64,000 nt of DNA, from assembly GCF_006345805.1 (NCBI RefSeq), contig NC_043003.1, forward strand, positions 116,622,001 to 116,686,000, in the 5' to 3' direction. The notes beneath the pieces were generated by a model. That model was given only the letters and a program-made list of their open reading frames with translations. It did no database searches and was not told the origin of the DNA. Position numbers and translations under genes: made by a program. This document shows, in pieces, positions 4,155-6,910 of this stretch. How positions within the stretch are numbered: the stretch's first letter is position 1; every line of letters starts with the position of its first letter. The stretch is from Octopus sinensis. Taxonomy: Eukaryota.

Positions 4155-4708
4155 GCCCTGATGCAGTACCAGGCAGTGGCTCTCATGGCTTCTGATCTTA
4201 ACTGATTGGGAGTGTTATCATGTACATTGTTTTGTCTTGGTATAAAAGATGGGCTACAGCAAATATTCTGCTCAATACCACAGATTTGCTTGTCAGTTGT
4301 TTGACCTTAACCAGTTGAGCATGTCCCTTAGTGGCTGACGATATGTGCATCTCTGATCACGAGCAGAAGTAGTGGGGGAGCATCATAGCCATGTGTTGAG
4401 AGGGATCCTTTGTGGTTTGAATGATCCACCTCTGGAAACATGGGTGGTTCTTTCAACATCCTTAAACAACCCTTATTCAGGGACCTTTTGAGCGGGATGG
4501 GCTACTCAACCTGAAGAAAATTCTAACTGGGCCCCACCTGCAAGGTCATGTGCTGTTTATCTTGATATGAGATCACCATGTCGCGCACATATGGTTGTGA
4601 TGCATGTGCCTGGTGTACCTTTATCAGACGAGTAGTCATGATGGGTATATTGGGCTTCGTATATTTTACCCCAGTGTCACTTTGATGGCATGCACTGCTC
4701 TCTCACTC
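4155..4708 (+). mobile_element. ~550-bp non-coding element between (AAT)n tracts, copy 1
   Basis: Starts GCCCTGATGCAGTACC, ends CTCTCTCACTC; four aligned copies. Strand inferred from neighbouring Dong copies. Confidence 0.85.
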
Positions 4709-4727
4709 AATAATAATAATAATAATA

Positions 4728-4759
<32 letters not shown>

Positions 4760-4778
4760 AATAATAATAATAATAATA

Positions 4779-4820
<42 letters not shown>

Positions 4821-5369
4821 GCCCTGATGCAGTATCCAGAAGAGGTTCTCATGGCTTCTGATCTTAACTGATTGAAGTGTTATCATGTACATTGTTTTGT
4901 CTTGGTATAAAAGATGGGTACAGCAAATATTCTGCTCAATACCACAGATTTGCTTGTCAGTTGTTTGACCTTAACCAGTTGAGCATGTCCCTTAGTGGCT
5001 GACGATATGTGCATCTCTGATCACGAGCAGAAGTAGTGGGGGAGCATCATAGCCATGTGTTGAGAGGGATTCTTTGGGGTTTGAATAATTCACCTCTGGA
5101 AACATGGGTGTTCTTTCAACATCCTAAACAACCCTTATTCAGGGACCTTTTGAGCGGATGGGCTACTCAACCTGAAGAAAATTCTAACTGGGCCCCACCT
5201 GCAAGGTCATGTGCTGTTTATCTTGATATGAGATCACCATGTCGCGCACATATGGTTGTGATGCATGTGCCTGGTGTACCTTTATCAGACGGGTAGTCAT
5301 GATGGGTATATTGGGCTTCGTATATTTTACCCCAGTGTCACTTTGATGGCATGCACTGCTCTCTCACTC
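4821..5369 (+). mobile_element. ~550-bp element, copy 2
   Basis: Same ends as copy 1; (AAT)n flanks. Confidence 0.85.
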
Positions 5370-5403
5370 AATATTAATAATAATAATCATTATAATAATA
5401 AAT

Positions 5404-5958
5404 ACCCTGATGCAGTACCAGACAGTGGCTCTCGTGGCTTCTGATCTTAACTGATTGGAAGTGTTATCATGTACATTGTTTTGTGTTGGCGTAAAAGATG
5501 GGCTACAATAAATATTCTGCCCAATACCACAGATTTGCTTGTCAGTTGTCTGACCTTAACCAGTTGACCATGTCCCTTAGTAGCTGACGATATGTGCATC
5601 TTTGACCATGAGCAAGAGTAGTGGGGGATTATCATAAACATATTTTGAGAGGGATTCTCTGGGGTTTGAATAATTCGCCTTTGGAAACATAGGTGTTTCG
5701 TTCAACATCCTTAAACAACCCTTATTCAGGGACATTTTGAACAGGATGGGTTACTCGACCAGAAATAAATTCTAACTGGGCCCCACCTGCAAGGTCATGC
5801 GCTGTTTATCTTGACATGAGATCACCATGTCGGGCACATATGGTTGTGATGCATGTGCCTAGTGTACCCTTATCAGAAAGGGTAGTCATGATGGGTATAC
5901 TGGGCTTCGTATATTTTACCCCAGTGTCACTTTGATGGCATGCCCTGCTCTCTCACTC
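5404..5958 (+). mobile_element. ~550-bp element, copy 3
   Basis: Same ends; more diverged than copies 1 and 2. Confidence 0.85.
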
Positions 5959-5992
5959 AATAATAATAATAGTAAAAATAATAATTAATAAC

Positions 5993-6068
<76 letters not shown>

Positions 6069-6910
6069 GCCCTGATGCAATACCAGGCAGTGGCTTTCAG
6101 GGCTTCTCATCTCAACTGATTGGAAGTGTTATCATGTACGTTGTTTAGTCTTGGTATAAAAGATGGACTGCAGCAAATACTACAGCTCAATACCACAGAT
6201 TTGCTTGTCAGTTGTTCGACATTAACCAGTTCACCATATCCCTTAGTGGCTGACGATATGTGCATCCTTGGTTACGAGTAAAGATATTGGGGGAGCATCA
6301 TAGCCATGTGTTGAGAGAAATTCTTTGGGGTTTGGATAATTCGCCTCTGGAATATGAGTGCTTCATTCAACTTTCTTAAAGAACCCTTATTCAGGGACCT
6401 TTTGGAGCAGAATGGGCTAATAAAGCTAAAGAAAATGTTAACTGGGTCCCACCTGCACTGTCATGTGCTATTTATCTTTATGTCTTTATTGCCCACAGGG
6501 GCTTAAACATAGAAGGGGGTAAACAAGGACAGACAAAAGGATTAAGTCGATTATAACGACCCCAGTGCGTAACTGGTACTTATTTAATCGACTCTGAAAG
6601 GATGAGAGGCAAAGTCGACCTGGGCAGAATTTGAACTTAGAACGTAACAACAGATGAAATGCCTATTTCTTTACTGCCCACAAGGGGCTACATACGTAGG
6701 GGACAAACAAAGACAGACAAACGGATAAAGTCGTTTATATCGACCCCAGTGCGTAACTGGTACTTATTTAATCGACCCCGAAAGGATGAAAGGCAAAGTT
6801 GAGCGTAGCGGCAGACGAAATACCGCTAAGCATTTCGCCCGGCGTGGTAAACTTGCTGCCAGCTTGCCGTCATGTGCTATTTATCTTGATATGAGACCAC
6901 CGCGTCCGCN
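6069..6910 (+). mobile_element. ~550-bp element, copy 4, interrupted by a SINE and ending at the assembly gap
   Basis: Same 5' end; most diverged copy; SINE C inserted at 6479-6868. Confidence 0.8.
6479..6868 (-). mobile_element. SINE family C, partial-dimer form, with 19-bp TSD
   Basis: TSD GTCATGTGCTATTTATCTT at 6460-6478 and 6869-6887; body duplicated as in the 20804 copy. Confidence 0.9.

What the first reader, a model, noticed from the sequence alone, without database searches (positions are those of the whole stretch)
4155..6910. Non-coding ~550-bp element with fixed ends that sits only between TAA repeats: candidate non-autonomous Dong parasite
Seen: four copies begin at the same base (CCCTGATGCA) and three complete ones end at CTCTCTCACTC; no ORF shared by all copies, no tRNA A/B boxes, no TIRs, no TG..CA ends; TATAAAAG about 85 bp inside; copies differ in divergence. 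Randomly 5'-truncated LINE copies would not share a 5' end. Established: short internally deleted derivatives of R2 exist. Inference: an analogous SINE-like element using Dong RT/RLE, with an unknown 5'-end-defining mechanism.
Basis: partly seen in the sequence, partly recalled or inferred. Interest (0 to 1): 0.8.

Follow-up and report, generated by a model that had tools for sequence, protein, structure and literature searches.

The report
Short non-coding retroelement in TAA repeats
Four copies of a 553-bp non-coding sequence sit head to tail between TAA repeats in an octopus-like genome; they look like a small parasitic retroelement that borrows the machinery of TAA-targeting "Dong-like" LINEs, a known kind of arrangement, but its helper LINE and how its 5' end is made were not shown.

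Summary
There are four same-strand copies of a ~553-bp unit: c1 4155-4708, c2 4821-5369, c3 5405-5958, and c4 6069-6478 plus 6869-6909. c4 is split by a SINE and cut by an assembly gap. Each copy is flanked by (TAA)n, and all share the 5' junction AATAAA(T)GCCCTGATGCA. The three complete copies end in CTCTCTCACTC. The unit has no shared ORF, no protein homolog, no Pol III boxes, no TIRs and no Rfam match.

New evidence favours a retroelement over local duplication. Private substitutions number 5, 6, 30 and 41 for c1 to c4, with only 4 on the c1/c2 stem, so a molecular clock is rejected (p = 8e-4 and 6e-6). This implies at least three insertions of different age from a conserved source. The consensus folds far better than shuffles only as + strand RNA (z = -3.7 against +0.8). 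The same TAA tract holds 5'-truncated RLE-type (Dong-like) LINE copies with variable 5' ends on the same strand.

Several things were not shown. The unit's ends do not match the two LINE families in the window. No copies outside this array could be retrieved. A 5' HDV-like ribozyme, the mechanism known for Bombyx Dong, is only a weak candidate. I read it as a probable Dong-dependent SIDE-like element: a new member of a known kind, of moderate interest.

The parts
3968..4154 (.). (TAA)n tract upstream of c1. It is the tail of LINE-B and ends in the irregular ...AATAAAT.
   Evidence: TRF row 3968-4152; sequence
4155..4708 (+). Unit copy c1, complete at 554 bp counted from the G of GCCCTG. It has 5 private substitutions.
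4709..4820 (.). Spacer 1: (AAT)7 (GAT)11 (AAT)n, ending in AATAAA.
4821..5369 (+). Unit copy c2, complete and 97% identical to c1. It has 6 private substitutions clustered at unit positions 14-25, and single-base deletions.
5370..5404 (.). Spacer 2: a short, degenerate TAA tract of 35 bp.
5405..5958 (+). Unit copy c3, complete and 91% identical to c1. It has 30 private substitutions in the 403 compared columns.
5959..6068 (.). Spacer 3: (TAA)n with interruptions, ending in AATAAAT.
6069..6478 (+). Unit copy c4, 5' part (unit positions 1-409), 87% identical to c1. It has 41 private substitutions.
6479..6868 (-). Secondary insertion in c4: a dimeric SINE of a multi-copy family. Its 19-bp target-site duplication is 6460-6478 / 6869-6887.
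6869..6909 (+). Continuation of c4 (unit positions 391 to about 431), cut by the assembly gap at 6910-7009.
4189..4212 (+). Stable 5' hairpin CUUCUGAUC-UUAACU-GAUUGGGAG. It is kept in c1-c3; c3 has a G-to-A change that turns U.G into U-A; c4 has one mismatch.
   Evidence: MFE and centroid structures; pair counts
4155..4243 (+). Candidate HDV-like fold, rated weak and inconclusive:
- P1: 4155-4161 with 4183-4189
- P3: 4171-4173 with 4180-4182
- P4: 4192-4209
- P2: 4166-4170 with 4239-4243
P1 and P3 are perfect only in c4.
4241..4248 (+). TATAAAAG motif 87 nt inside the unit. It reads CGTAAAAG in c3. Its function was not tested.
4380..4603 (+). Long-range 17-bp helix (4380-4396 with 4587-4603). 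Three of its pairs are G.U, so it forms only in the + strand RNA.
2061..2905 (+). Context: LINE-A copy 1, 5'-truncated. It carries the C-terminal CCHC and restriction-like endonuclease (RLE) ORF at 2278-2697, a 208-bp 3' UTR and a (TAA)n tail.
2943..3247 (+). Context: LINE-A copy 2. It has a different 5' truncation point and is 89% identical to copy 1.
3359..3967 (+). Context: LINE-B, a second RLE-type family. It is 5'-truncated and frameshifted, with a 166-bp 3' UTR and a (TAA)n tail.

Best explanation
The unit is a short, non-autonomous non-LTR retroelement, SIDE- or SINE-like in role. It is copied through a + strand RNA that ends in (UAA)n, and it is inserted by target-primed reverse transcription (TPRT) into (TAA)n tracts by an RLE-type, Dong-like LINE of the octopus genome.

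Shown:
- It is a discrete 553-bp non-coding unit.
- It has the same strand and the same 3' junction phase as the Dong-like LINE fragments in the same TAA tract.
- It arose from at least three insertions of different age from a slowly evolving source.
- Its RNA structure is specific to the + strand.

Inferred:
- The helper is a Dong-family LINE not present in this window.
- Each insertion lands in the TAA tail of an earlier element, which builds the head-to-tail array.
- The c1/c2 pair may be a local duplication or a dimer copied from a read-through transcript.

The uniform 5' junction most likely has one of two causes. One is self-cleavage by an HDV-like ribozyme at or just upstream of the junction, as proven for Bombyx Dong. 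The other is that the template RNA keeps some upstream (UAA)n, so that the cDNA anneals to the target repeat and gives a seamless junction. The second cause would also explain why the irregular AATAAA-TG is inherited by every copy.
For: Copies, ends and TAA flanks.

Non-coding. There is no common ORF. A six-frame pseudo-protein found no hit at E <= 1e-3 among 5.8 billion proteins, although the neighbouring LINE-A ORF finds 817.

Substitution pattern. Over 403 ungapped columns the private substitutions are c1 5, c2 6, c3 30 and c4 41, with a c1c2|c3c4 split of only 4. c3-c4 divergence is 18.0% against 13.0% for c1-c4.

Clock test. Tajima relative-rate tests give chi2 = 11.3, p = 8e-4 (c1 vs c3) and chi2 = 20.5, p = 6e-6 (c1 vs c4). 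c3- and c4-private sites are interleaved (runs test z = 0.8), so c1/c2 is not a mosaic of the two.

RNA structure. The consensus folds as + strand at -188 kcal/mol, z = -3.7, with 0 of 100 shuffles as good; the - strand gives z = +0.8. c1 behaves the same. The older c3 is weaker, z = -1.3.

Neighbours. They are RLE-type LINE 3' ends with variable 5' truncation. Their best hits are Octopus bimaculoides proteins, and the C-terminus of P0016, a 63%-identical LINE-A relative, aligns to the endonuclease region of solved R2 proteins (E about 1e-4).

Literature:
- Octopus carries Dong/R4 elements (PMC9115989).
- Dong has a 5' HDV-like ribozyme that cuts at the TAA junction (PMC3774820).
- A 529-bp R2 SIDE is built as ribozyme + unrelated centre + 3' UTR (PMC3414825).
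- Target sequence retained on the RNA gives uniform junctions and propagates junction variants.
Against: No sequence similarity links the unit to LINE-A or LINE-B (whole copies and 3' UTRs), or to the UTRs of a full-length Dong-like element from another organism. Smith-Waterman scores are no better than shuffles. No helper is therefore identified.

All four copies lie in one array, so targeting and dispersal are unproven.

No ribozyme family scores in Rfam, even at E <= 10.

The hand-built HDV-like fold beats shuffles only in c4 (1%), not in c1-c3 (23-62%). It shows no compensatory change, and its candidate catalytic C lies unusually close to P2. The youngest copies carry a central P1 mismatch.

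No unit-derived ORF is in the protein collection, although that collection does include a Logan contig carrying an octopus-like LINE-A copy.

A tRNA-like retrocopy at 61925-62005 has a TAA tail but no upstream TAA. A TAA tail alone therefore does not prove TAA targeting.
Confidence: 0.6

Rival explanations
1. A single insertion, or any unique sequence lying between two TAA tracts, was amplified in place by unequal crossing-over between the flanking (TAA)n tracts. The shared 5' end would then be inherited from one event, and no end-defining mechanism is needed.
For: All copies are adjacent, in the same orientation and separated by recombination-prone microsatellite. Similarity falls with distance along the array: c1-c2 97%, c1-c3 91%, c1-c4 87%. 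c1 and c2 have equal private counts, 5 and 6, as expected for a recent local duplicate.
Against: Neutral in-place duplicates should be clock-like. The c1/c2 stem carries 4 changes where about 24 are expected from c3's 30. c3-c4 divergence is 18% where 13% is expected. Relative-rate tests reject equal rates (p = 8e-4 and 6e-6), and c1/c2 is not a mosaic of c3 and c4. The spacers differ in length (187, 112, 35 and 110 bp) and in their interruptions.
Confidence: 0.12
2. The unit is only the long 3' UTR of an autonomous Dong-family LINE, not a separate element. The copies would be 5'-truncated LINE insertions that share a preferred truncation or template-switch point.
For: 5'-truncated LINE 3' ends with TAA tails fill the same tract. 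A structured + strand RNA is also expected of an RLE-LINE 3' UTR (PMC3414825).
Against: Three or four insertions share the same 5' base, whereas the LINE-A copies next door are truncated at different points. The 553 bp contain no trace of the well-conserved C-terminal endonuclease coding region. The 3' UTRs of the LINEs examined are only 166-305 bp.
Confidence: 0.1
3. The unit is a satellite-like repeat family, with TAA as part of the period. It would be kept uniform by gene conversion or concerted evolution within a larger array that continues into the assembly gap. c3 and c4 would be copies that escaped homogenisation.
For: The organisation is tandem with a period of about 584-666 bp. The array is cut by an N gap at 6910-7009, so its true size is unknown. 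Homogenisation could mimic a slowly evolving source.
Against: The consensus-like copies c1/c2 sit at the array edge next to LINE-B, not in the interior. Strand-specific RNA structure and the shared strand with TAA-tailed LINEs are not expected of a satellite. The spacers are not homogenised.
Confidence: 0.1

Closest known systems
R2 SIDEs (short internally deleted elements), e.g. the 529-bp R2Dwi_SIDE of Drosophila willistoni (Eickbush & Eickbush 2012, PMC3414825)
   Same: - Size of about 0.5 kb.
- No coding capacity.
- Sits at the target of an RLE-type site-specific LINE, in the LINE's orientation.
- Near-uniform full-length 5' ends.
- Expected to depend on a structured 3' end and on a processed 5' end.
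   Different: - The target is a (TAA)n microsatellite, not the 28S rRNA gene.
- For the R2 SIDE, the ends are demonstrably homologous to the helper's UTRs and the ribozyme was shown to cleave. Neither is shown here.
- Transcription cannot ride on Pol I rDNA transcription.
Dong, the TAA-repeat-specific R4-clade LINE (Xiong & Eickbush 1993), and its 5' HDV-like ribozyme (Eickbush et al. 2013, PMC3774820)
   Same: - Insertion in (TAA)n with a (TAA)n 3' tail.
- A G-initiated 5' end directly after the repeat.
- Octopus genomes contain Dong/R4 elements (PMC9115989).
   Different: - The unit has no ORF.
- It has no detectable similarity to the Dong-like copies available here.
- A ribozyme is not demonstrated.
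LINE-dependent SINEs and CR1-derived SIDEs (e.g. Persaeus in Lepidoptera, PMC6740152)
   Same: A non-autonomous element that is copied by a LINE's machinery and accumulates as full-length short copies.
   Different: - No Pol III A/B boxes and no small-RNA-derived head.
- A 3'-end match to a helper was not found.
L1Tc/NARTc Pr77 of trypanosomes (dual internal promoter and HDV-like ribozyme, PMC3383444)
   Same: A possible model for a 5' module that both promotes transcription and trims the RNA. In the candidate fold the TATA-like motif overlaps the proposed P2 strand.
   Different: This is purely an analogy. Neither promoter nor ribozyme activity is shown, and the LINE clade is different.

Membership tests
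SIDE-type non-autonomous derivative of an RLE-type site-specific LINE (R2 SIDE paradigm) | Short, with no protein-coding capacity. | tested here: met
   No ORF is common to the copies. The six-frame search found no homolog.
SIDE-type non-autonomous derivative of an RLE-type site-specific LINE (R2 SIDE paradigm) | Inserted at the helper's target sequence and in the helper's orientation. | tested here: met
   All four copies lie between (TAA)n tracts on the + strand, like LINE-A and LINE-B. The 3' junction phase N|AATAAT is the same as LINE-A's. This rests on one locus only.
SIDE-type non-autonomous derivative of an RLE-type site-specific LINE (R2 SIDE paradigm) | 3' end homologous in sequence or structure to the helper's 3' UTR. 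| tested here: inconclusive
   No similarity to the LINE-A or LINE-B 3' UTRs, nor to the L046 elements. The true helper may be a family not in the window, and a full-length octopus Dong could not be retrieved.
SIDE-type non-autonomous derivative of an RLE-type site-specific LINE (R2 SIDE paradigm) | 5' end homologous to the helper's 5' UTR or ribozyme. | not testable with these tools
   No full-length octopus Dong sequence was accessible. The 5' UTR of the foreign element in L046 shows no similarity.
SIDE-type non-autonomous derivative of an RLE-type site-specific LINE (R2 SIDE paradigm) | Self-cleaving HDV-like ribozyme at the 5' end. | tested here: inconclusive
   Rfam gave no match, but it also gave none on the 5' end of the full-length-looking Dong-like element in L046, so it has no positive control here. 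The descriptor search gave a fold that is good only in c4 (1% of shuffles as good) and no better than shuffles in c1-c3. There is no covariation.
SIDE-type non-autonomous derivative of an RLE-type site-specific LINE (R2 SIDE paradigm) | Propagates by repeated independent insertion. | tested here: met
   The tree is star-like and not clock-like, with 5, 6, 30 and 41 private changes. Relative-rate tests give p = 8e-4 and 6e-6. That implies at least three events. Dispersal to other loci is untested.
Classical SINE (Pol III, tRNA/7SL/5S-derived head) | Internal A and B boxes, or a small-RNA-derived 5' head. | tested here: not met
   ARAGORN found nothing. No B box within 2 mismatches on either strand. 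The control tRNA-like unit at 61925-62005 scores both boxes.
5'-truncated copy of an autonomous Dong/R4 LINE | Variable 5' ends, with coding remnants upstream of a short 3' UTR. | tested here: not met
   The 5' junction is the same in all copies. There is no protein similarity. LINE-A copies in the same tract show the expected variable truncation.
Tandem duplication or satellite evolving neutrally in place | Clock-like (ultrametric) divergence among the repeats. | tested here: not met
   c3-c4 divergence is 18.0% against 13.0% for c1-c4. The Tajima tests are significant.
MITE / PIF-Harbinger-type DNA transposon (TAA/TTA target duplication) | Terminal inverted repeats. | tested here: not met
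   No inverted repeat involves the termini.
Hammerhead retrozyme or other catalogued self-cleaving RNA | Match to a ribozyme covariance model. | tested here: not met
   No hammerhead, twister, hatchet, pistol or HDV-family hit at E <= 10. The CUGAUGC at the 5' end deviates from the hammerhead core, and no GAAA box follows.

The most novel reading that the evidence does not exclude
The unit needs neither a ribozyme nor a promoter at its own 5' end.

On this reading it is transcribed as read-through RNA from a neighbouring copy; the TATA-like motif 87 nt inside each unit would drive transcription into the next unit. The RNA therefore carries (UAA)n on both sides of a complete unit. During TPRT the cDNA pairs with the target microsatellite at both ends.

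This would give seamless 'fixed' ends, inheritance of the irregular AATAAA-TG junction, and occasional insertion of dimers such as c1-c2. It would be a tandem-propagating microsatellite parasite, distinct from ribozyme-bearing SIDEs.
Probability: 0.15. Interest if true: 0.6.

Novelty: new member of a known kind. Interest (0 to 1): 0.4.

Why it matters
If confirmed genome-wide, this would be a SIDE-like parasite of a microsatellite-targeting (Dong-type) LINE. I found no report of one in the literature searched.

It would offer a compact natural 'mini-element' of 553 bp for asking which RNA features a Dong-type RT/RLE needs at the 3' end. It would also show how 5' ends are made when the target is a simple repeat, by ribozyme or by repeat annealing.

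It also bears on how TAA microsatellite tracts in cephalopod genomes grow into nests of retroelements.

The principle itself is already established: non-autonomous derivatives of RLE-type LINEs exist, and Dong has a 5' ribozyme. The finding extends known biology rather than overturning it.

Tried and rejected
Searches that found nothing useful:
1. A six-frame pseudo-protein of c1 was searched against the 5.8-billion-protein collection, to fish for unit copies in other assemblies. There were no hits.
2. Conserved 17-22-mers of the unit were scanned in the metagenome and prokaryote-genome collections. Only chance matches of 17-31 nt appeared.
3. Unit strings were searched in paper texts and in the octopus transcript supplement of PMC9115989. 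Nothing was found.
4. The octopus UniRef protein P0001 is not on record in the contig collection. A Logan contig (L048, SRR16213285) holds only another LINE-A copy, 86.6% identical, and no unit.
5. Rfam at permissive thresholds on the unit gave only low-complexity artefacts (CrcZ on the TAA repeats). It also found nothing on the 5' end of a full-length Dong-like element (L046), so it is not a valid negative test for Dong-type ribozymes.

Structure attempts that stayed inconclusive:
6. My own HDV-fold descriptor finds a solution in 85-98% of shuffled sequences, so it has little power. Only c4 stands out.
7. Other hand-built folds were considered and dropped. One placed P1' at about +253. Another used upstream TAA bases in P1, with a 5-bp P3, an 8-nt L3, a 6-bp P4 and an 8-bp P2. 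Each lacks either a sound P1 in the consensus or C residues in L3.

Interpretations ruled out:
8. Hammerhead reading of the 5' CUGAUGC: rejected.
9. MITE or TIR element: rejected.
10. Pol III SINE: rejected.
11. c1/c2 as a c3/c4 recombinant: rejected by the runs test.

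Full report
WHAT IS THERE

The window is eukaryotic: 36% G+C, dense microsatellites, SINEs and one N gap. The LINE fragment next to the finding has its best protein hits in Octopus bimaculoides at 86% and 82%, so the source is an octopus or a close relative.

blastn of the first copy against the whole window finds exactly four copies of a ~553-bp unit, all on the + strand and all in one head-to-tail array:
- c1, 4155-4708
- c2, 4821-5369 (97% identical to c1)
- c3, 5405-5958 (91%)
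- c4, 6069-6478 (87%)

c4 resumes at 6869 after a 390-bp insertion and is then cut by the N gap at 6910-7009. The insertion is a minus-strand dimeric SINE of a family with other copies in the window. It is flanked by a 19-bp target duplication.

The copies are separated by TAA tracts of 187, 112, 35 and 110 bp. All four begin AATAAA + TG/G/TA/TG + CCCTGATGCA. The three complete ones end CTCTCTCACTC|AATAAT.... Two refinements apply. The common 5' end includes an irregular extra A and TG just upstream of CCCTG. All the evidence comes from one array.

WHAT IT IS NOT

- Not coding. No reading frame is shared by the copies. A six-frame pseudo-protein of the unit has no hit at E <= 1e-3 among 5.8 billion proteins. 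The 139-aa ORF of the neighbouring LINE finds 817.
- Not a Pol III SINE. There is no tRNA and no B box. The only A-box-like hit is the TATA-like TGGTATAAAAG itself. A tRNA-like retrocopy elsewhere in the window scores both boxes with the same patterns.
- Not a TIR element. No inverted repeat involves the termini.
- No catalogued RNA family. Rfam gives nothing at gathering score over the whole window, and nothing credible at E <= 10 over the array.

CONTEXT

The same TAA-rich stretch, just upstream, holds three 5'-truncated LINE 3' ends on the same strand, each ending in (TAA)n:
- LINE-A at 2061-2905
- LINE-A at 2943-3247 (89% identical to the first, with a different truncation point)
- LINE-B at 3359-3967

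Their C-termini carry a CCHC knuckle followed by a PD...D...K-type motif. P0016, a relative 63% identical to LINE-A, aligns to the endonuclease region of solved R2 proteins (9nl3_A, 9dou_A; E about 1e-4).

They are thus RLE-type LINEs with TAA tails sitting in TAA tracts, which is Dong-like behaviour. Published work reports Dong/R4 elements in octopus, including a full-length Dong consensus (PMC9115989). In a contig from another invertebrate (L046) I found the same arrangement: a full-length-looking element of about 4.8 kb between (TAA)21 and (TAA)6, followed by a truncated LINE-A-like copy.

INSERTION OR LOCAL DUPLICATION?

This is the key question. If all four copies descend from one event by unequal crossing-over between TAA tracts, the 'fixed 5' end' means nothing.

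In the 403 ungapped columns shared by all four copies the counts are:
- private substitutions: c1 5, c2 6, c3 30, c4 41
- sites supporting the c1c2|c3c4 split: 4

Neutral in-place duplicates must be clock-like. Given 30 changes on c3, the stem leading to c1/c2 should carry about 24, and c3-c4 should be as far apart as c1-c4. Instead c3-c4 divergence is 18.0% against 13.0%.

Tajima relative-rate tests reject equal rates, with p = 8e-4 for c1 vs c3 and p = 6e-6 for c1 vs c4. c3- and c4-private sites are interleaved (runs test z = 0.8), so c1/c2 is not a recombinant of the older copies.

The pattern is the star-shaped, unequal-branch tree typical of insertions of different age from a slowly evolving source. 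At least three events (c4, c3, and the ancestor of c1/c2) therefore produced the same 5' junction. c1 and c2 themselves may be a local duplicate or a co-inserted dimer. A satellite kept uniform by conversion from unseen copies beyond the gap remains a minority alternative.

AN RNA-LEVEL SIGNAL

The majority consensus of the unit folds as + strand RNA at -188 kcal/mol, against -163.9 +/- 6.5 for dinucleotide shuffles (z = -3.7, 0 of 100 shuffles as good). The reverse strand gives z = +0.8. c1 behaves the same way. The older c3 has lost most of the signal, z = -1.3.

Part of the asymmetry comes from helices rich in G.U pairs. One example is the 17-bp pairing of 4380-4396 with 4587-4603.

A sense strand that ends in (UAA)n and is selected for structure is what a TPRT template recognised by its LINE protein should look like.

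THE HELPER

The unit shows no similarity to the LINE-A or LINE-B copies (whole copies or 3' UTRs), or to the UTRs of the L046 elements. Smith-Waterman scores fall within the shuffle range. The helper is therefore not one of the two families in view.

No octopus full-length Dong sequence could be retrieved. No further octopus DNA could be searched by nucleotide sequence; the one octopus-like Logan contig reached carries only LINE-A. 'Dong parasite' thus remains an inference from target, strand, junction phase and neighbourhood.

THE 5' END

Bombyx Dong has an HDV-like ribozyme that self-cleaves exactly at the (TAA)n/Dong junction. R2 SIDEs retain the R2 ribozyme (PMC3774820, PMC3414825).

I looked for such a fold. 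The best candidate uses these helices:
- P1: GCCCUGA (nt 1-7) with nt 29-35
- P3: 3 bp
- P4: the stable hairpin at nt 38-55
- P2: nt 12-16 paired with GGUAU of the TATA-like motif

The candidate is perfect only in c4, where 1% of shuffles do as well. In c1-c3 it has a central P1 mismatch and a broken P3, and is no better than shuffles (23-62%). There are no compensatory changes, and the candidate catalytic C sits unusually close to P2.

My descriptor finds some solution in most shuffled sequences. Rfam also misses the 5' end of the full-length-looking Dong-like element in L046. The computational test is therefore inconclusive rather than negative.

A second established route to uniform junctions fits the data at least as well. 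[quoted passage not shown] Here every copy carries the same irregular AATAAA-TG, and the target repeat lies on both sides of each unit.

VERDICT

The most likely reading (about 0.6) is a non-autonomous, SIDE-like retroelement of a Dong-type LINE that accumulates in TAA tracts. Rivals:
- local amplification of one insertion (0.12)
- a long LINE 3' UTR with a recurrent truncation point (0.10)
- a homogenised satellite (0.10)

It is a new member of a known kind. The decisive checks are a genome-wide BLAST with junction analysis, comparison with full-length octopus Dong UTRs, and an in vitro self-cleavage assay. None of these could be run here.

Noticed in passing
window 2061-2905, 2943-3247, 3359-3967: Three 5'-truncated RLE-type (R2/R4/Dong-like) LINE 3' ends from two families lie on the + strand. 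Each ends in (TAA)n, and they are nested in one TAA-rich stretch. The best protein hits are Octopus bimaculoides uncharacterised proteins.
   Followed up: yes
window 6479-6868 (TSD 6460-6478 / 6869-6887): A dimeric minus-strand SINE is inserted into copy c4, with a 19-bp target-site duplication GTCATGTGCTATTTATCTT. The same family occurs at 20807-21216, 34415-34685 and 39167-39346.
   Followed up: partly
window 61925-62145: An ~80-bp tRNA-like unit (A box TGGCGTAGTGG, B-box-like AGTTCGATTTC) is followed by a 140-bp (TAA)n tail but has no TAA upstream. It is a TAA-tailed retrocopy outside a TAA tract, and possibly a true Pol III SINE or a template-jump product of the same LINE machinery.
   Followed up: partly
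window 6910-7009: A 100-bp run of N (assembly gap) cuts the array inside c4. The sequence resumes in an (AGA)n tract, so the real number of units is unknown.
   Followed up: no
protein P0064 (UniRef UPI00321971E2): A protein labelled Escherichia coli is 84% identical to the octopus LINE-A ORF. A bacterial assembly is probably contaminated with cephalopod DNA.
   Followed up: no
L046 3062-7833 and 7852-about 8790 (ENA ERZ25067903, contig ctg32125): A full-length-looking Dong-like element lies between (TAA)21 and (TAA)6. It has a 5' UTR of about 420 bp, RT and zf-RVT ORFs, a 3' UTR of about 305 bp, and TATAAAAAG 60 nt from its 5' end. A truncated LINE-A-like copy follows it. This is the same nesting habit in an unidentified invertebrate.
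   Followed up: partly
window 25524-25895: A 123-aa ORF resembles, by eye, the C-terminus of an RTE/L2-type LINE reverse transcriptase (...VQFAGHCCR...REVWRSMV). It is unrelated to the finding.
   Followed up: no
window 4834-4845 (c2) and 4408-4427 (c1): The few private substitutions of the two young copies are clustered. Six fall within 12 bp in c2 and four within 20 bp in c1. That suggests single multi-base mutational events rather than independent point changes.
   Followed up: no
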